A stretch of 64,000 bases of DNA from sequence record NC_048747.1. One strand, written 5' to 3'. Of this stretch, positions 4,062 to 56,023 are shown one piece after another (position 1 is the first letter of the stretch; each line of letters begins with the position of its first letter). A model generated the notes under the pieces. It was not told the origin of the DNA. It ran no database searches and saw only the letters and a list, made by a program, of their open reading frames with translations. The translations under genes were made by a program, and so were the position numbers.

Positions 4062-4532
4062 TTATTCTAATGGTTCGGCTGTTAGATTATTGAAGTAGAA
4101 AGTCTGACCTACAAAAGGTTGCAGGATGTCTACCAGACGTTCGGCTTCTTCGACTGGAACATCGTAAGCCACACTCATATGTGGTTTGTATTCCGGCCAG
4201 CTGTGATCGTAACCTAAAGATAACCAACTGTAGTGTTCTTCAGTCAAGTCATTAGAACTCAACGTTAGCGCTACCGCAGCTTGAACGCCATCTTTGACTT
4301 CACCTAAGAGTTCGACACCAATGACCTCAGCTTCAAACACCTTACTTGGGTCGATCTTAGGTTCTAAAGCGCTGTCGATTAAATCGCGGTCAAAGGCTAT
4401 CGTGCAATGAAACTTACCTTGGTCGATAGGGGTGATGTTTTGACTCACCAACATATCACGAATAGCGCCACATTGATGGTACGCTAAATCTACACTGACA
4501 TAACCTTTGGTCTTACTAGCTTCAGTGGTCAT
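4062..4532 (-). CDS. acb1: 2H phosphoesterase, Acb1/T4 gp57B-like anti-CBASS nuclease
   Basis: 156 aa with two HxT/S motifs (KFHCTIAF, KPHMSVAYDV); LGYDHSWPEYKPH resembles T4 57B LGATHDFDDYTPH; C-terminal EPL. Confidence 0.72.
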   Translation of the reverse strand: MTTEASKTKGYVSVDLAYHQCGAIRDMLVSQNITPIDQGKFHCTIAFDRDLIDSALEPKIDPSKVFEAEVIGVELLGEVKDGVQAAVALTLSSNDLTEEHYSWLSLGYDHSWPEYKPHMSVAYDVPVEEAERLVDILQPFVGQTFYFNNLTAEPLE

Positions 4533-4586: not shown

Positions 4587-4925
4587 TTAATCGAGACTCC
4601 AGTGTGTTCGATAGATCTTCATGAAAGGTTCTGGGAAGCTGCTTCTCCAACGACACGCAGGACACTCGAACTGCCCATCTACGTAGTTGGTTCTCGGCAT
4701 GCTATCACACTCACCTAGTCTCCCACAGTACGGTGAGTAATTAGGTCTCGTCATAAGGTTATTACGGACGATACTGTTGATCAGAGGATGTTGTGAGATA
4801 TTAGTGTTGAACTCACTCACTTCCAAAGGCGTCATGTCTTTGTAGGCTTTTTGTGAAGCTTCCTTAATCTTGTTCAGAATCTCTTTGGATTCGGTCATGT
4901 CGATCATCGTTTGTATCTCCACCAT
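4587..4925 (-). CDS. Small Cys4 putative zinc-binding protein
   Basis: YCGRLGEC and FECPAC motifs; overlaps the RNase H stop; true start may be a downstream Met. Confidence 0.6.
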
Positions 4926-5428
4926 TGTTTGGATTTGTCTGGTGTGAATTTTGGAAGGTTTTCATTGAAAGTGAAATACCCTTCATCTTCTAATGTTGCA
5001 TTATTACGAGCAGCGTTTTGTGCTAATGTGTCGCAACGTTCGTTATCTGGATCCCCGGAGTGACCCTTTACCCAATTCCACGTCACATCATGGTAACGTG
5101 TCATATCGTAAAGTCGTTTCCAGAGGTCTACGTTTTTAACAGGACCGCCATCCGCACGCTTCCAGCCTCTTCTACGCCAACCGTGAATCCATTGTTCGAT
5201 TCCTTGTTTGACATACTGAGAATCAGTGGTAACCGATACCTTACGTCTTTCAGGCAGTCCCTCTAGGGCTACAATTGTGGCAAGCATCTCCATACGGTTG
5301 TTAGTGGAGCGTCGATAACCCGCACTTAACTCTATGGTGACTTCTCCATCACGAATAACAATCCCGTACCCCGAAGGGCCAGCACCGGATTCTCCCACAG
5401 AGGAACCGTCGGTGTTGATAATGAGCAT
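4904..5428 (-). CDS. rnhA: Ribonuclease HI
   Basis: [36 protein letters not shown]: catalytic D/E/D/H/D set present. Confidence 0.96.
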
Positions 5429-5452: not shown

Positions 5453-6421
5453 TCATACATACGACCTGACAGTTAGATTTGATTGACGACCAGTGAGTAC
5501 GTCGTGTTTAAATTGGAAATACGTTTGTTTAGCATAGTAAGTGATGACCTTACGTATTGCTTGTTGAGGTAAGTCAATTTTCTCCGCAATTGCTTCAATA
5601 CGCACTTCCCAATCGATAATGTTTTCTTTGATAGTCTCCAACCACTCTTTACCTAAGAGTTCATCGTACCCATCTTTACGGCGACGTGGGACACCCTCTA
5701 TCTGCTTCCGAGCCCAAGAACGGAAAGTGACTCCGTAGTGTGATCTGTGTAGGGAATCCACAAAGTTGGAAGTGAGATCATTTTTTAAGAAGTACTCTTT
5801 AGGGGTCATATTACTCTTCAGGAAGTCTCTTCTAATGCAAGAAATGCGGGTATAGGAAATGAACTCGTAAGGAGTTTCTGGACCGTTGTGTTGGTACCAA
5901 ATGCGGTAAAACCAACAATGACTGCCTCTAAAGAAGTTCACTAAGTCTTCTCTAACTTTAAGTTTGCCTTTAGCTTTTTGGATGATACGAATCATTACAA
6001 ACGCCAGGTATTCCTCAACGTTGTCAAATTCACTATCAATGTAATCTTTGGCAAGACCAAGTGAGCGCAAGTATGTTATCTCGGAAACGGTGAACTTGAA
6101 TTTCTCACGGAAATAAACACAAAGGTTGCGTGGGTCCCCATAACCCATCTTCACATGCAACTGATTCAGATCAAAGTTGGGGTCTCTGAGTAAGTCGAGT
6201 ACTGCTTTTTCTCTTTGGATCACAAACCATTGGACAGAGCCCATGTCTGTCGCTTTAACAATCAATTTAGAGATGATGGACTTATCTATGCCGAAAAGTT
6301 GAGATAAGTGTTTTAAAGTGACTCTGTGTGCTTTACCCTGGACCTCTTGGTTAATCCTTTCCCATAATTCTTTTTCTTTATTGGAAAGATGATCTAGGGT
6401 TTTGTTGTTTGCTTGTTCCAT
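5453..6421 (-). CDS. Protein of tandem AraC/XylS-type DNA-binding domains
   Basis: Residues ~19-117 and ~140-238 each follow the AraC double-HTH pattern (MGYGDPRNLCVYFREKFKFT; TPYEFISYTRI; HYGVTFRSW); third partial HTH at ~258-312. Confidence 0.6.
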   Translation of the reverse strand: MEQANNKTLDHLSNKEKELWERINQEVQGKAHRVTLKHLSQLFGIDKSIISKLIVKATDMGSVQWFVIQREKAVLDLLRDPNFDLNQLHVKMGYGDPRNLCVYFREKFKFTVSEITYLRSLGLAKDYIDSEFDNVEEYLAFVMIRIIQKAKGKLKVREDLVNFFRGSHCWFYRIWYQHNGPETPYEFISYTRISCIRRDFLKSNMTPKEYFLKNDLTSNFVDSLHRSHYGVTFRSWARKQIEGVPRRRKDGYDELLGKEWLETIKENIIDWEVRIEAIAEKIDLPQQAIRKVITYYAKQTYFQFKHDVLTGRQSNLTVRSYV

Positions 6422-6452
6422 GTTATTCCTTAGTAAAGGTTAATTATTTGCT

Positions 6453-6464
6453 GGTGTATAGATT
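6453..6464 (-). promoter_or_regulatory. Degenerate early-promoter-like motif
   Basis: Minus strand AATCTATACACC upstream of 5453..6421; partial match to the AAATCTATATTA motif. Confidence 0.35.
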
Positions 6465-6480
6465 AAAGGAACTTAATACA

Positions 6481-6595
6481 TTTGCTGTTATATTAAGTAT
6501 ATAAATATATTAAAAATAATAAATAGACAACGTTTTTTCTTTTTTCTTTCTCCCCCTCCCCAAAAAGATAGAAATAGTAGTTAGAAAATAATTAA
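6481..6595. other. AT-rich non-coding element with CCCCCTCCCC core
   Basis: TATAT-rich tract, T-tract, CCCCCTCCCC at 6552-6561; same layout at 55001-55097. Confidence 0.5.
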
Positions 6596-6596
6596 T

Positions 6597-6627
6597 TATC
6601 CCTCTTCCTTTATCGGGAAGAGGGATA
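6597..6627. terminator. Intergenic hairpin/terminator
   Basis: 12-bp stem TATCCCTCTTCC/GGAAGAGGGATA right after the 6632 stop. Confidence 0.65.
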
Positions 6628-7171: not shown

Positions 7172-8410
7172 TTACAGTAGTGAAGCTGTACGTACTTGTT
7201 TAATGATGCGCAGACGGTTGTATAGAACCGATACTGCTTCGTTAATCACGGAACCTTCAATAGTACCAATCGTACCCAGAACATCTTCAGTAGACTGTTT
7301 AGGGAACAACAACGCAGTAACATGTTTACGAAGCTCTTGCTTGGACATGTCCCACGTCACTTTGGTGGTTGGGGTAGCGTAGTCCTCACCTTCTTTCTTC
7401 GGTGCAAACAACAAGAACTCAACTTTGTCACCCGTGCGTTCAAGCGGTACGAATGTTAGCGTGTTGTACACGTAGCCAGAACCGATAGTATCGAATTCAA
7501 ATCCACGGAAGATCTCGATGCTCACATCAGATTGATAGATGTGGAATTCATTGATGTTTAGTCGAGGTGCGTAAAGACTACGGTCTGACGGTGCAAAGCG
7601 ACCAACTCGTAGCGAGTTACACACAATGTGGCTATTTTTGATCATCGCGTTGCTAATATGAGAGTATTTATCAACGCTAACATGAGAGTCGTTGATAAAC
7701 GTTTCTTCGATATTACCAGGGATTCTGACGTAAGAATTTTCAATGTGAGTTTTGTTAACACGGCTGGCTTCAAACTTAAACCCGTTGAAACTTACTTCAG
7801 AGTCAAAGATGGAATAAAGTTCTACTTCTCCACGACGATAATCAGGACCAATCAAAACCGAGTTTTGGATATGATCAATTTTACCTTCAACTGAAACAAG
7901 TATTGAAGTGCCTTCATCATACGTGTCAGAGTAGTCGATACGATCTAATTCCACTTCAGAGTTGTAGACGATCAAAGTGCGAGGTCTAGCGTCCACAGGA
8001 TTATCAATAGTGCTTAGGTAAGCCGGACGAGGTCGCTCCATTTCAAACTTGATGCTAGAAGATTTATCCAGCCAAATAACAAGACCTGCACCCATCTCGA
8101 TTGGATAAAAATCAACCTCTTCTAACTTAGGTTCAGGTAAGTCATGGTCAAAGAACCCACGACTTTGTGAGGTACCATTTAACTTGCGTTTTAAGTCGCT
8201 GTAACGGTATGAGCCACGACTCATTAGTAGGTCGGATAATTTCTTTGAAGGGCCGGTTTCGTCGATCATGATGACGTTACCTTTCTTATCCACGACGCCG
8301 CCTTTGAGTGTACTGACGTGCATTTTTGCTTCTTCTTTCACTACCGGAGCTTCTGCTGCCGCTGGAACTTCAGGAGTTTCTACTTTGGTAGCTTTCTTGT
8401 TGTTAGCCAT
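7172..8410 (-). CDS. Hypothetical protein with beta-helix-like I-x-N/D-S repeats
   Basis: 412 aa; IQNSVL, IFDSEV, IENSYV, INDSHV, IKNSHI repeats. Confidence 0.65.
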   Translation of the reverse strand: MANNKKATKVETPEVPAAAEAPVVKEEAKMHVSTLKGGVVDKKGNVIMIDETGPSKKLSDLLMSRGSYRYSDLKRKLNGTSQSRGFFDHDLPEPKLEEVDFYPIEMGAGLVIWLDKSSSIKFEMERPRPAYLSTIDNPVDARPRTLIVYNSEVELDRIDYSDTYDEGTSILVSVEGKIDHIQNSVLIGPDYRRGEVELYSIFDSEVSFNGFKFEASRVNKTHIENSYVRIPGNIEETFINDSHVSVDKYSHISNAMIKNSHIVCNSLRVGRFAPSDRSLYAPRLNINEFHIYQSDVSIEIFRGFEFDTIGSGYVYNTLTFVPLERTGDKVEFLLFAPKKEGEDYATPTTKVTWDMSKQELRKHVTALLFPKQSTEDVLGTIGTIEGSVINEAVSVLYNRLRIIKQVRTASLL

Positions 8411-53530: not shown

Positions 53531-54024
53531 GACACCACCAATTTAGCCAATGCCTTGTTGTGTTGTTTCGCCAAGTCCGTCAATGTTAAAAGTACATCCA
53601 CCATCTCTTCATCTCCCATAGAGAAATACGTGGTAGAGGTTCCTATTTGTATGATCATTTTAAAAGAGTCCTTAAAATGATGTTGAATGGAAATGGTGAC
53701 TTGGTCGTGGATGTCTCGATGTGGGACCACCCAAGATCGCTGCCGACTTCCTTCACTGTCCGAAGTGGTAATAAACTCATGGACTTTATCCAACACACCA
53801 ATAAGTTCGGTAACGTGTTGGATGTGACGGTTCAGTTCTTGGTTCAGGGTATTATCAACGTCCAACATACAAAACACGGAGGCGGTGTTTCGGTTCTTGA
53901 TGGAATAACCCACATTAATGAATCTTCCTTTGTACGACTCACTAATAAAGAATTCAGCACAACACAGTGCACCTTCATCGTTAGTTAACCAATCTCGAAC
54001 GTAATGGTTTCTTAGATCACTCAT
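53527..54024 (-). CDS. Hypothetical protein, possible paralog of 53024..53530
   Basis: 165 aa, ATGA-coupled, similar N-terminal pattern. Confidence 0.7.
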   Translation of the reverse strand: MSDLRNHYVRDWLTNDEGALCCAEFFISESYKGRFINVGYSIKNRNTASVFCMLDVDNTLNQELNRHIQHVTELIGVLDKVHEFITTSDSEGSRQRSWVVPHRDIHDQVTISIQHHFKDSFKMIIQIGTSTTYFSMGDEEMVDVLLTLTDLAKQHNKALAKLVVS

Positions 54025-54860
54025 ACACGCTCCAGGTCCTTAGGAGTGTAAAGCGATTGAACTGACATCTTTCCTCTTAACACCTCGGTTAGATCTTTCA
54101 GGTCACGCAGTTCAATACGACGGATTTTAACCAGTAGTTTGTCTTTAAGGATGTACGCCGACTTGAAGTGATACCCTTTGATGTAAGCCAAGTGTTCTTC
54201 GGTTTCCGACTCAGGATCAAACCGAACTGTATCAAACGTCCCGACATGAGAAGTGAGTAACCCTAAGCAGTCAAAGTCATACATTTCTACCCGAGTTGTC
54301 ATTAACTCTGTGAAACGCTGGAGTTTTCTAGGGAGTTGAACTTTATCCACGTAACGTTTACCAATCGACTTAGGACCCAGGTGCTTTGTGTAAACCAGTT
54401 TAGGGAAGTAATCAACGACCTTAGACTCTACCGCAGACTCTTCAATCAAGAACTTACTTACTCGACGCATTGCTCTGACCGCCCTAGCAATTTTCTCATC
54501 ATCCATTTGAAGACGATCAAGTCGCTCTAAGAAGCGATACATGTCCATAGATTCATCTCGGTATTTTTCTAACCACTCTTCGAACACATTCACACCATCG
54601 ATCGATTTCTTATCTCCTTTATTACACCAGATACGTTGCAGTGTAGGATAGTATTTGTGTTCTTTATTTTCATCCAACAGCTTAATGATTTCTCGTTCGT
54701 TCTCTAGACCTGCTCTCCAACCCGGTAATGAGTCACAAGCATCATACCAGTAGTCGTGATTACAAATGCGCTGGTATAGTTTTAACAACTCAGGTTGTTG
54801 TGACATAATGTTCTTTTCAAAGCGAGTAGCGAAACGTTGGGTGTAAGTTAGTTTAGTCAT
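54021..54860 (-). CDS. Hypothetical protein
   Basis: 279 aa; HDYWYDACDSLPGWRAG resembles a small HDW-Y..DD..W..G motif I recall from phage proteins. Confidence 0.7.
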   Translation of the reverse strand: MTKLTYTQRFATRFEKNIMSQQPELLKLYQRICNHDYWYDACDSLPGWRAGLENEREIIKLLDENKEHKYYPTLQRIWCNKGDKKSIDGVNVFEEWLEKYRDESMDMYRFLERLDRLQMDDEKIARAVRAMRRVSKFLIEESAVESKVVDYFPKLVYTKHLGPKSIGKRYVDKVQLPRKLQRFTELMTTRVEMYDFDCLGLLTSHVGTFDTVRFDPESETEEHLAYIKGYHFKSAYILKDKLLVKIRRIELRDLKDLTEVLRGKMSVQSLYTPKDLERV

Positions 54861-54904: not shown

Positions 54905-55097
54905 GTTAGTCTAGTATACGTTAAATAACCTTTATACGTATTACTTCGTAATACTCACCGTATATACTCCCATCACTTCGTAATGTCGTATATACTCTAA
55001 GGTATATTTAACTTAGTATATTAATTAAATTATCTTCGATGTTTTTCAAGTCTTTGCCCCTCCCCCATTAGGATAACTTTCACAGTAAGAAAATATT
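54905..55097. repeat. AT-rich non-coding region with direct/inverted repeats and CCCCTCCCCC
   Basis: ACTTCGTAAT x2 (54943, 54975), CGTATATACTC x2 (54959, 54987), hairpin GTATTAC-TTC-GTAATAC, C-tract 55057-55066. Confidence 0.65.
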
Positions 55098-55409
55098 TTA
55101 CTTAGATTCAAAATAATCAAGTAATAGGGTTCCGTGAACTAAGTTATTAAACTCAGATACTACGAAGTCACACTTTAATGACTTTAAAGCAGAGATCAGG
55201 AATTTATCTGATGCTTGATCAACGTACTGGTTATACCAAGTTCCATTGCTCCATCGGAAAATGTCGTAAGCATTAACGAAGTACAAGTCCTTGTATCGAG
55301 TTATCCTTAAAGTGAGTTCTTCTTCCGGACTGGTCCGTATTAATAGTCTGGCGACGTTCTCATAAGGAAAGTCTTTGGGTTTCTTTTTGAAACAGTTAAA
55401 TAAACGCAT
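55098..55409 (-). CDS. Possible KilA-N-like DNA-binding protein
   Basis: LRITRYKDLYFVNAYDIFR..W..KFLISAL resembles the KilA-N Y(I/V)NAT..W..F..L pattern. Confidence 0.4.
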   Translation of the reverse strand: MRLFNCFKKKPKDFPYENVARLLIRTSPEEELTLRITRYKDLYFVNAYDIFRWSNGTWYNQYVDQASDKFLISALKSLKCDFVVSEFNNLVHGTLLLDYFESK

Positions 55410-55624: not shown

Positions 55625-56023
55625 TTAAAGGTGTACGACGTTATTTAAACCAGTTTCGTTTAACTGATGGTGACTACGAAGTTGGTTGTACTCTTCTTGG
55701 TAGCTGATCTCTGGTTCTCTTGTATCAGACTTACGAACATTATACACGTCCATCTGGAACGAGTAGCTGGTGATCCCTCTACGGCGCACCATTTGGAAAG
55801 TGTAGTTGATGTTCAAGTTATCCATAATGGCAAAGATGCGATTAAGTGAGATACTTTTAACACTACCGTTCTTAATAGAACTTAACGTTGAAGGGTTCAC
55901 TTTAGCCATCTCCGCCATCGCTTTAATACTCTTCACTTTATGGTGACGGTAAATCCAGCTGCTTAGTTGAACTAGTGCGAAGATACGAATTTGGTTTAGT
56001 GAACCGTCTTTCTTGATAGTCAT
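55625..56023 (-). CDS. XRE/Cro-C1-type HTH regulator
   Basis: SIKAMAEMAKVNPSTLSSIKNG..ISLNRIFAIMDNL. Confidence 0.75.
   Translation of the reverse strand: MTIKKDGSLNQIRIFALVQLSSWIYRHHKVKSIKAMAEMAKVNPSTLSSIKNGSVKSISLNRIFAIMDNLNINYTFQMVRRRGITSYSFQMDVYNVRKSDTREPEISYQEEYNQLRSHHQLNETGLNNVVHL

What the first reader, a model, noticed from the sequence alone, without database searches (positions are those of the whole stretch)
5453..6421. Phage protein built only of tandem AraC/XylS DNA-binding domains (about 2.5 copies, no ligand domain)
Residues ~19-117 read as a full AraC double HTH (TLKHLSQLFGIDKSIISKLI..QREKAVLDLLRDPNFDLNQLHVKMGYGDPRNLCVYFREKFKFT). Residues ~140-238 form a second (SHCWFYRIW..G.TPYEFISYTRI..F..LH..YGVTF..W), and ~258-312 a third half-domain (IEAIAEKIDLPQQAIRKVI). 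AraC regulators are typical of bacteria and, to my knowledge, unusual in lytic jumbo phages; a ligand-free concatemer is stranger still. It could constitutively bind extended or repeated sites, hijack host AraC regulons (in vibrios these include ToxT/ExsA-type virulence and Rob/MarA-type stress regulators), or bind the AT-rich element upstream of its own gene.
Basis: partly seen in the sequence, partly recalled or inferred. Interest (0 to 1): 0.75.

Follow-up and report, generated by a model that had tools for sequence, protein, structure and literature searches.

The report
Phage protein of 2.5 AraC domains
A nucleus-forming giant Vibrio phage encodes a conserved protein made only of two and a half AraC-type DNA-binding domains, one of four such sensor-less DNA binders in this phage, and a ~70 bp DNA module found only in front of this gene and one other is a concrete candidate for its binding site.

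Summary
ORF 5453-6421(-) of Vibrio phage 2 TSL-2019 (Chimalliviridae, Gorgonvirinae) is a real 322 aa gene under purifying selection. It has two complete seven-helix AraC/XylS DNA-binding domains (residues 14-120 and 135-243), a basic disordered linker and a first-half-only AraC unit (258-319). There is no sensor or dimerisation domain. Pfam sees only D1. D2 and D3 are supported by profile-profile comparison (97% probability each) and by a confident AlphaFold model that aligns to MarA, SoxS, AdpA and N-Ada.

New context changes the picture:
- The same genome carries three more AraC-domain-only genes (3+2+2 domains), also noted earlier by this scan on another piece of the genome.
- All four genes are conserved across Gorgonvirinae and are essentially absent from other cultured phages.
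- Two-domain-only AraC proteins also exist in marine Bacteroidota.
- A ~70 bp module occurs exactly twice in the genome: upstream of this gene and upstream of a 279 aa gene of unknown function. Both copies are conserved in relatives whose proteins are only ~20% identical.

The most likely function is a ligand-independent, single-chain DNA binder that reads a long asymmetric site, possibly this module. The target and the polymerase partner are untested.

The parts
5453..6421 (-). CDS of the 322 aa protein with 2.5 AraC domains (QAU04271.1)
   Evidence: ORF list; phrog_27247 E=9e-105; 15 syntenic orthologs; dN/dS 0.12-0.14
6062..6382 (-). D1, residues 14-120: complete seven-helix AraC/XylS DNA-binding domain
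   Evidence: HTH_18 at 26 bits here and 39-45 bits in orthologs; hhalign 99.9%; MarA Z 8.6, SoxS Z 8.2
6020..6061 (-). Short, well-ordered D1-D2 connector (residues 121-134, contains helix 124-128)
   Evidence: pLDDT about 90 across this stretch
5693..6019 (-). D2, residues 135-243: second complete seven-helix AraC-type domain. It is the domain most diverged from canonical AraC but the best conserved within the family
   Evidence: hhalign 96.7%, E=4.7e-10; 3oio Z 8.8, AdpA DNA-binding domain Z 8.5; MarA is the top PDB hit of a D2-only profile; dN/dS 0.05-0.08
5651..5692 (-). Disordered basic linker (residues 244-257, includes a PRRRK patch)
   Evidence: pLDDT below 50 for residues 244-255; R247 and G251 invariant; dN/dS 0.03 in one pair
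5465..5650 (-). D3, residues 258-319: half AraC domain (helix 1, first HTH and the long helix 4). There is no second HTH
   Evidence: hhalign 97.2% to positions 8-57 of the 112-position AraC profile; N-Ada HTH part Z 5.7; AraT C-terminal domain E=9e-4
6597..6627 (-). Intrinsic-terminator-like hairpin ending the upstream gene
   Evidence: 12 bp stem followed by a T-rich tail; the stem is kept by compensatory changes in relatives
6546..6595 (-). Copy A of the conserved cis-module (T-rich TwACT box, 16 nt, GGGGnAGGGG block, AAAG), which continues into the AT-rich block
   Evidence: Invariant core in orthologs whose proteins are 20-38% identical; nhmmer profile built only from distant relatives, E=1.2e-6
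6441..6550 (-). AT-rich block, the lowest-GC stretch of the genome
   Evidence: 16% GC, minimum of all 80 nt windows
6454..6462 (-). Degenerate copy of the phage promoter-like core (TCTATAcAc against the consensus TCTATATTAC), about 45 nt before the ATG
   Evidence: Genome-wide motif survey; diverged orthologs carry the canonical motif at this position
6427..6443 (-). Leader/RBS motif TTAACCTTTAnTAAGGA
   Evidence: Four copies in the genome, each 5-8 nt before an ATG
6064..6545 (-). Cassette of about 480 nt that is 100% identical to Photobacterium phage PDCC-1 (G-block through D1), against 65-90% identity in the flanks
   Evidence: pS=0 and pN=0 in D1 against pS of about 0.75-0.79 elsewhere; identity profile
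55024..55102 (-). Copy B of the cis-module, the only other significant copy in the genome
   Evidence: nhmmer E=1.8e-4, next hit E=0.4; conserved upstream of the orthologous gene in five relatives
54021..54860 (-). 279 aa gene of unknown function downstream of module copy B (candidate co-regulated gene)
   Evidence: ORF list; phrog_27923, no Pfam match; found only in Gorgonvirinae
4904..5428 (-). RNase HI gene immediately downstream and co-oriented (24 nt gap; the two genes overlap in the metagenomic relative L014)

Best explanation
The gene encodes a ligand-independent, sequence-specific DNA-binding protein. It is a single chain carrying five AraC-type helix-turn-helix motifs: two complete AraC/XylS DNA-binding domains joined rigidly, then a flexible basic linker and a lone first-half domain. 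Shown here: the architecture, its conservation, and the absence of any sensor or dimerisation domain. Inferred: because MarA-type domains place their two HTH motifs in adjacent major grooves, this chain should read a long asymmetric site of roughly 40-55 bp as a monomer. The tandem domains would replace the dimerisation that ordinary AraC regulators need, and activity would be set by when the protein is made and not by a ligand. The tethered half-domain either contacts a fifth groove, as N-Ada's single HTH does, or pairs with a second molecule. The most likely target is phage DNA: the conserved ~70 bp module that occurs only upstream of this gene and upstream of a 279 aa gene. That would mean autoregulation plus one co-regulated promoter, inside a phage that transcribes its genome with its own sigma-less RNA polymerases. 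My rough odds: about 0.95 for the architecture, about 0.8 for a DNA-binding regulator of some kind, and about 0.35 for this module being the target.
For: Architecture. The distant member P0011 shows all three units against a generic AraC profile (25, 32 and 24 bits), with the third again covering only the first half. All orthologs are basic, pI 8.8-9.6 and net +5 to +17. All domains and the linker are under purifying selection. The gene is fixed in the same slot in every relative, including uncultured ones. The module is a two-copy element by an objective scan, E=1.2e-6 and 1.8e-4 with the next hit at 0.4. Copy A stays with this gene in Tidunavirus despite an inserted gene upstream, and is absent only where no intergenic region exists. 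Copy B is conserved upstream of the 279 aa orthologs. Both copies lie upstream of promoter-like motifs. The leader is not a structured RNA, so the conservation acts at the DNA level. A lone AraC-type HTH half bound to DNA has a precedent in the N-Ada/DNA entry 1u8b. Single-HTH MarA truncations bind the marbox as dimers (preprint 10.64898/2026.09.23.753698).
Against: No binding data exist. The module could be read by any of the three AraC paralogs, by the Cro/C1-type HTH protein two genes upstream of copy B, or by the phage RNA polymerase itself. A co-variation test between the two copies was negative: phiKT1028 has GGGGTAGGGG at copy A but GGGGAGGGGG at copy B. The module has no internal direct repeats. 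AraC activators normally work through sigma-70 region 4 or the alpha C-terminal domain of host polymerase (established knowledge), and jumbo-phage polymerases are unrelated multisubunit enzymes that act independently of host RNAP (PMC7598289; PMC10299810). Activation of phage promoters would therefore need new contacts. The relatives L013 and L014 keep the gene without copy A.
Confidence: 0.45

Rival explanations
1. Host-directed regulator. The protein stays in the cytoplasm, binds host chromosomal sites (as a MarA/SoxS/Rob-like mimic) or captures host RNA polymerase, and so re-programmes or shuts down host transcription early in infection.
For: D1 is a recognisable canonical AraC domain. Canonical AraC activators act through host sigma-70 or the alpha C-terminal domain (established knowledge; MarA/alpha-CTD model 1xs9 and SoxS/RNAP complex 7w5w appear). 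In diverged orthologs the gene carries the AT-rich promoter-like motif that, by analogy with other jumbo phages, marks early genes (PMC7598289).
Against: D2 and D3 are far from canonical AraC yet strongly conserved within the phage family, which suggests adaptation to a phage-specific partner or site. A conserved phage-borne two-copy module offers a phage target. No host genome or expression data were available.
Confidence: 0.2
2. Replication-linked or architectural DNA binder and not a transcription factor, for example a protein that marks an origin or organises DNA, as Rob binds oriC in E. coli and AdpA binds oriC in Streptomyces (recalled knowledge).
For: The gene is embedded in a conserved module of Rad50/SMC-like, NAD-dependent DNA ligase, 5'-3' exonuclease (in L014), RNase HI and thymidine kinase genes, and is tightly coupled to RNase HI. 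It lies next to the most AT-rich stretch of the genome.
Against: There is no GC-skew inflection at this locus. There are no iteron-like direct repeats. Both module copies sit just upstream of promoter-like motifs and start codons, which fits promoters better than origins.
Confidence: 0.12
3. The tandem AraC folds have lost DNA binding and act as a protein-protein scaffold or decoy, for example by occupying polymerase surfaces.
For: D2 lacks a Pfam-detectable signature in this protein. The conserved disordered C-terminal tail (T317, Y321 and V322 invariant or nearly so) looks like a short linear interaction motif.
Against: The protein is basic throughout the family. The fold matches DNA-bound AraC domains at rmsd 2.6 A. 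The family hallmark is kept in D2 as YG-x-T-F-x-x-W.
Confidence: 0.08

Closest known systems
MarA / SoxS (stand-alone AraC/XylS DNA-binding domains, PDB 1bl0, 7w5w)
   Same: Seven-helix double-HTH fold with no sensor domain; activity is set by abundance and not by a ligand. D1 aligns at Z 8.2-8.6.
   Different: MarA and SoxS have one domain (about 110-130 aa) and read about 20 bp. This protein chains two full domains plus a half. Its own Pfam score is below the cut-off. The likely polymerase partner in a nucleus-forming phage is not sigma-70 RNAP.
The 3+2+2 AraC-domain operon of the same phage (genome 4411-6996; phrog_7620)
   Same: Same genome and same phage subfamily; proteins made only of tandem AraC DNA-binding domains.
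   Different: Those three are canonical (HTH_18 at 90-97 bits), adjacent to each other and near the genome end. This protein is strongly diverged (hhalign to them only 51-74% probability), forms its own PHROG, sits in the replication module and ends in a half-domain.
N-terminal domain of E. coli Ada (PDB 1u8b, 1wpk)
   Same: A single AraC-type HTH subdomain used without its partner. D3 aligns at Z 5.7 and the first half of D1 at Z 6.4.
   Different: In Ada the HTH is fused to a zinc methyl-acceptor domain. Here it is tethered to two full AraC domains by a basic linker.
Cellular AraC-domain-only tandem proteins (for example P0155, 215 aa, two HTH_18 domains, beside SusC/SusD in marine Bacteroidota; P0072 with four domains)
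   Same: Proteins consisting only of tandem AraC DNA-binding domains.
   Different: They are cellular, have canonical sequences (about 100 bits per domain) and whole-number domain counts. They are uncharacterised as far as my literature searches went.
Six-gene array of tandem-HTH DNA binders in phage Goslar (earlier scan note s1-157511)
   Same: Another nucleus-forming phage with a panel of small, basic multi-HTH proteins.
   Different: A different HTH family (Myb/SANT-like, T5 D5-like according to that note). Not examined here.

Membership tests
AraC/XylS family (Pfam HTH_18 PF12833 / HTH_AraC PF00165) | Sequence match to the family profile above the curated cut-off | tested here: inconclusive
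   This protein scores 26 bits against a cut-off of 33.6, in D1 only. Orthologs pass for D1 at 44.4, 45.2 and 39.1 bits. Distant members pass with matches in D2 (P0008, P0011) and show an HTH_AraC hint in D3 (P0010). Profile-profile comparison gives D1 99.9%, D2 96.7% and D3 97.2%.
AraC/XylS family (Pfam HTH_18 PF12833 / HTH_AraC PF00165) | A domain of about 100 residues with seven helices: two HTH motifs joined by a long central helix | tested here: met
   The model has helix patterns of 7 (residues 14-120) and 7 (135-243) at pLDDT about 85-95. Structural alignments over 103-108 residues at rmsd 2.6 A to MarA and to the AdpA DNA-binding domain. D3 has only the first four helices.
AraC/XylS family (Pfam HTH_18 PF12833 / HTH_AraC PF00165) | Sequence-specific DNA binding and control of transcription through RNA polymerase contacts | not testable with these tools
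   Only indirect evidence: basic pI of 8.8-9.6 and a conserved candidate site.
Classical two-domain AraC regulators (AraC, XylS, ToxT, Rns type) | A companion sensor or dimerisation domain next to the DNA-binding domain | tested here: not met
   Residues 14-319 are fully accounted for by the 2.5 DNA-binding domains and two linkers. No other Pfam family scores significantly.
MarA/SoxS-type minimal AraC proteins | A single DNA-binding domain makes up the whole protein | tested here: not met
   Two complete domains plus a half-domain in one chain.
Gorgonvirinae tandem-AraC paralog group (phrog_7620) | Full-length match to the phrog_7620 profile | tested here: not met
   Only D1 matches phrog_7620 (E=1.2e-14, residues 17-118). 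The full-length match is to a separate family, phrog_27247. hhalign to the paralogs is at domain level only.

The most novel reading that the evidence does not exclude
Gorgonvirinae phages use a panel of four ligand-free tandem AraC-domain proteins (9.5 domains, 19 HTH motifs) as promoter-specificity or timing factors for their own sigma-less multisubunit RNA polymerases inside the phage nucleus. The 2.5-domain member would read the two-copy ~70 bp module. AraC domains would then have been re-wired to a non-bacterial-type polymerase. This would give a handle on the open question of how jumbo-phage polymerases recognise promoter classes they cannot recognise alone in vitro (phiKZ middle promoters, PMC7598289).
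Probability: 0.15. Interest if true: 0.85.

Novelty: new variant of a known kind. Interest (0 to 1): 0.6.

Why it matters
Little is known about how nucleus-forming jumbo phages control transcription. [quoted passage not shown] A phage subfamily that has fixed four sensor-less multi-AraC DNA binders, one of them paired with a conserved two-copy DNA module, offers a small and directly testable regulatory circuit: one protein, two sites and two promoters. It also documents an undescribed AraC architecture, 2.5 domains in a single chain, which shows how tandem duplication can replace dimerisation. This is relevant to AraC-family evolution and to the design of long-site DNA binders. My searches found no paper describing these genes.

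Tried and rejected
- **Structured RNA in the leader:** rejected. The fold z-score is -0.07, RNAalifold finds no covariation and there are no Rfam hits.
- **Internal direct repeats or iterons in the upstream element:** none found.
- **Replication origin from GC skew:** no inflection at this locus.
- **Co-variation of the G-block between the two module copies:** negative in phiKT1028.
- **Extra ~341 aa gene upstream in Tidunavirus as a paralog:** rejected; hhalign probability 0.1% and no Pfam match.
- **Origin by recent truncation of the 3-domain paralog:** not supported; similarity is at domain level only.
- **Link to the published RNase H-clamp protein Rhc:** none. The neighbouring gene is a plain 174 aa RNase HI and the paper does not mention this gene.
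- **Public RNA-seq for expression timing:** no RNA run holds the locus.
- **Detecting the phage RNAP subunits with Pfam PF00562 and PF00623:** no match. This is inconclusive because these subunits are very diverged. I relied on taxonomy and the literature instead.
- **Function of the 279 aa gene:** only a weak language-model lead to integrase N-terminal SAM-like/core-binding domains (score 0.90, 85 shared features), which I treated as a lead only.
- **Restricted tool input:** I did not resend them and used the window sequence, search results and related-loci loci instead.
- **Literature searches for AraC proteins in jumbo or Vibrio phages:** nothing relevant.

Full report
**What is there.** The window is genome 124001-188000 of Vibrio phage 2 TSL-2019 (MK368614, 242,446 bp). 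The phage belongs to genus Aphroditevirus, subfamily Gorgonvirinae, family Chimalliviridae. Its relatives phiKT1019 and phiKT1028 have been shown experimentally to form a phage nucleus, and ChmA is present in Aphrodite1 and pTD1 (PMC10587174). The ORF at 5453-6421 on the minus strand encodes 322 aa and is annotated 'hypothetical protein'. It is a real gene. It matches phrog_27247 end to end (E=9e-105). It has syntenic orthologs in all 15 Gorgonvirinae records at 100% down to ~20% identity. It evolves under purifying selection, with dN/dS of 0.12-0.14 overall and 0.03-0.08 for D2 and the D2-D3 linker.

**Domain count.** On this protein Pfam sees only a sub-threshold HTH_18 match at residues 40-114 (26 bits against a cut-off of 33.6). 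The same region passes the cut-off in Aphrodite1, pTD1 and phiKT1028.

D1 against D2 aligns 94 columns in register (score 28.2), and D1 against D3 aligns 47 columns (score 30.7). None of 200 column-shuffled controls reached either score; the maxima were 20.8 and 17.7.

I then built a generic AraC DNA-binding-domain profile from 142 cellular hits, a sample of which Pfam confirmed as ordinary HTH_18 proteins. Against it D1 scores 99.9%. D2 scores 96.7% (E=4.7e-10, 104 columns). D3 scores 97.2% (E=2.9e-11) but covers only positions 8-57 of 112, the first half. That profile came from hits to the whole family profile, so some circularity is possible. An unbiased search of all PDB sequences with D2-only and D3-only profiles still puts AraC-family proteins at or near the top, with marginal E-values: MarA at 0.04 for D2 and the AraT C-terminal domain at 9e-4 for D3.

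An AlphaFold model built from eight family members is confident (mean pLDDT 83.9, pTM 0.65). It shows seven helices at 14-120, seven at 135-243, a disordered stretch at 244-255 and four helices at 259-319. Structural alignment gives:
- D1 to MarA: Z 8.6, rmsd 2.6 A over 108 residues; SoxS Z 8.2.
- D2 to 3oio: Z 8.8; to the AdpA DNA-binding domain: Z 8.5, rmsd 2.6 A over 103 residues.
- D3 to the single-HTH part of N-Ada: Z 5.7.

The most distant family member, P0011, shows all three units against the generic profile at 25, 32 and 24 bits, and its third unit is again a half. The 2.5-copy layout is therefore ancestral. No other domain is present.

**Family range and context.** A profile search of 1.84 billion representative proteins found about 2,460 hits at E<=0.001. 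Among the 150 listed, only eight align over most of their length; nearly all the rest match the D1 part only. The three metagenomic full-length members I traced sit in the same genomic slot. That slot reads Rad50/SMC-like, NAD-dependent DNA ligase, a 5'-3' exonuclease (in L014), this gene, RNase HI, then Acb1-like, GroEL-like and thymidine kinase genes. The gap to RNase HI is 24 nt here, and the two genes overlap in L014.

**The protein is one of four.** A six-frame HTH_18 scan of the whole genome found seven more domains near the left end, outside the window. They lie in three consecutive, overlapping genes of 392, 241 and 233 aa with 3, 2 and 2 AraC domains (90-97 bits each) and nothing else. 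These genes are conserved in the same 15 phage records, and RefSeq labels them 'transcriptional regulator'. Their similarity to the 2.5-domain protein is at domain level only (51-74% hhalign probability). The protein in the finding is therefore an old, diverged lineage.

Using the most canonical paralog as query, tblastn against 50,697 phage records finds only the Gorgonvirinae genomes, plus unannotated fecal contigs and mis-filed bacterial fragments. AraC domains are thus rare in cultured phages at this sensitivity. Tandem AraC-domain-only proteins do exist in cells: several proteins of 215-254 aa with two domains, and one with four. One of them lies beside SusC/SusD genes in a marine Bacteroidota genome.

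**The upstream region.** After a terminator hairpin (6597-6627) comes a 175 nt leader region. It is better conserved than the protein and contains the most AT-rich 80 nt of the genome. It is not a structured RNA.

A genome-wide k-mer survey revealed a promoter-like consensus: an AT-rich stretch, then TCTATATTAC, then GGTG 3-4 nt later. It occurs at about 15 intergenic sites, all on the gene-sense strand, 30-90 nt upstream of start codons, with 25-30-fold enrichment in upstream regions. By analogy with other RNAP-encoding jumbo phages, this is probably the early, virion-RNAP promoter (PMC7598289). That assignment is inferred, not shown. This gene has a degenerate copy, but its diverged orthologs carry the canonical motif at the same position.

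Further upstream lies a module: a T-rich TwACT(G) box, 16 nt, GGGGnAGGGG, AAAG, and in most lineages an ATAATTTAA-type AT box, about 70 bp in all. It is retained upstream of this gene in relatives whose proteins are only ~20% identical. It stays with this gene in Tidunavirus although another gene has been inserted upstream. It is missing only in two metagenomic relatives that have no intergenic region.

An nhmmer profile built only from the distant relatives finds exactly two significant sites in this genome. One is here (E=1.2e-6). The other is at window 55024-55102 (E=1.8e-4), and the next hit is at E=0.4. The second copy lies upstream of a 279 aa Gorgonvirinae-specific gene of unknown function. 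It is conserved upstream of that gene's orthologs in five relatives and is again followed by a promoter-like motif.

**How it probably works.** The steps that are shown: the fold, the domain count, the lack of a sensor domain, the basic charge, the conservation, and the two-copy module. The steps that are inferred:
- Each AraC domain places two recognition helices in adjacent major grooves, as in MarA-DNA. A chain with five HTH motifs could therefore read about 40-55 bp as a monomer.
- The covalent tandem replaces dimerisation, and the amount of protein replaces a ligand as the control.
- The tethered half-domain adds a fifth contact or pairs between molecules. Precedents are the N-Ada/DNA structure and single-HTH MarA truncations that bind the marbox as dimers.
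- The module is the operator, which would give autoregulation plus one target.

The last step is the weakest. A co-variation test was negative. Other readers are possible: the three paralogs, a nearby Cro-type HTH protein, or the polymerase itself. It is also unknown whether the protein acts in the phage nucleus or on the host. Canonical AraC activation uses sigma-70 or alpha-subunit contacts that jumbo-phage polymerases are not expected to offer (PMC7598289 and PMC10299810). I could not detect the phage RNAP genes with cellular Pfam models, which is expected given their divergence, so I rely on family membership for this point.

**A side observation.** A cassette of about 480 nt (window 6064-6545) is 100% identical to Photobacterium phage PDCC-1, while the flanks are 65-90% identical. 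It runs from the G-block through the promoter and leader to the end of D1, and it stops at the D1/D2 junction. This is a recent recombination patch. A second one lies at 8104-8223. The coincidence with a domain boundary may be chance.

**Verdict.** The protein is a new architectural variant of a well-known family in an unusual biological setting, and it now comes with a specific, testable target hypothesis.

Noticed in passing
L025:1912-4497 (genome 4411-6996, outside the window): Three adjacent, overlapping minus-strand genes of 392, 241 and 233 aa made only of 3, 2 and 2 canonical AraC domains (HTH_18 at 90-97 bits). They are conserved in all 15 Gorgonvirinae records and lie downstream of a 259 aa ORF that has a canonical promoter-like motif at genome 7916.
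   Followed up: partly
window 2207, 12251, 36723, 44555, 51786, 57560 (minus strand) and about 9 more sites genome-wide: Promoter-like consensus: an AT-rich stretch, TCTATATTAC, then GGTG 3-4 nt later. About 15 intergenic copies, all gene-sense, 30-90 nt before start codons. Probably the early (virion RNAP) promoter class, by analogy with other jumbo phages.
   Followed up: partly
window 6427-6443; genome 66430, 54866, 209556: Leader/RBS motif TTAACCTTTAnTAAGGA, 5-8 nt before the ATG of four genes. The other three also share an upstream ACATACAGT-N10-TCTATATAG element, which has five copies in the genome.
   Followed up: partly
window 6064-6545 and 8104-8223: Patches that are 100% identical to Photobacterium phage PDCC-1 against a 65-90% background, indicating recent recombination between phages isolated on different host genera. 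The first patch ends at the D1/D2 junction of the AraC-like gene.
   Followed up: partly
window 4062-4532 (-): A 156 aa protein matching Pfam Acb1 (anti-CBASS 2H phosphodiesterase) at 58.5 bits against a cut-off of 27. Syntenic Acb1-like genes are present in the metagenomic relatives.
   Followed up: partly
window 55625-56023 (-): A 132 aa Cro/C1-type HTH protein (HTH_26 and HTH_3; phrog_7126), two genes upstream of module copy B. It is another candidate reader of that module.
   Followed up: no
window 54021-54860 (-): A 279 aa Gorgonvirinae-specific protein downstream of module copy B. There is only a weak language-model lead to integrase N-terminal SAM-like/core-binding domains (score 0.90, 85 shared features).
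   Followed up: partly
L025:308-1273 (genome 2807-3772, outside the window): A tubulin/FtsZ-like gene (Pfam Tubulin at 27 bits, below the cut-off), probably PhuZ, directly downstream of the 3+2+2 AraC operon.
   Followed up: no
L002:4749-5774, L005:1708-2748, L006:1748-2773: Tidunavirus genomes have an extra 341-346 aa gene of unknown function inserted between the 160 aa gene and the AraC-like gene's regulatory module. It has no Pfam match and is not a paralog of the AraC-like gene.
   Followed up: partly
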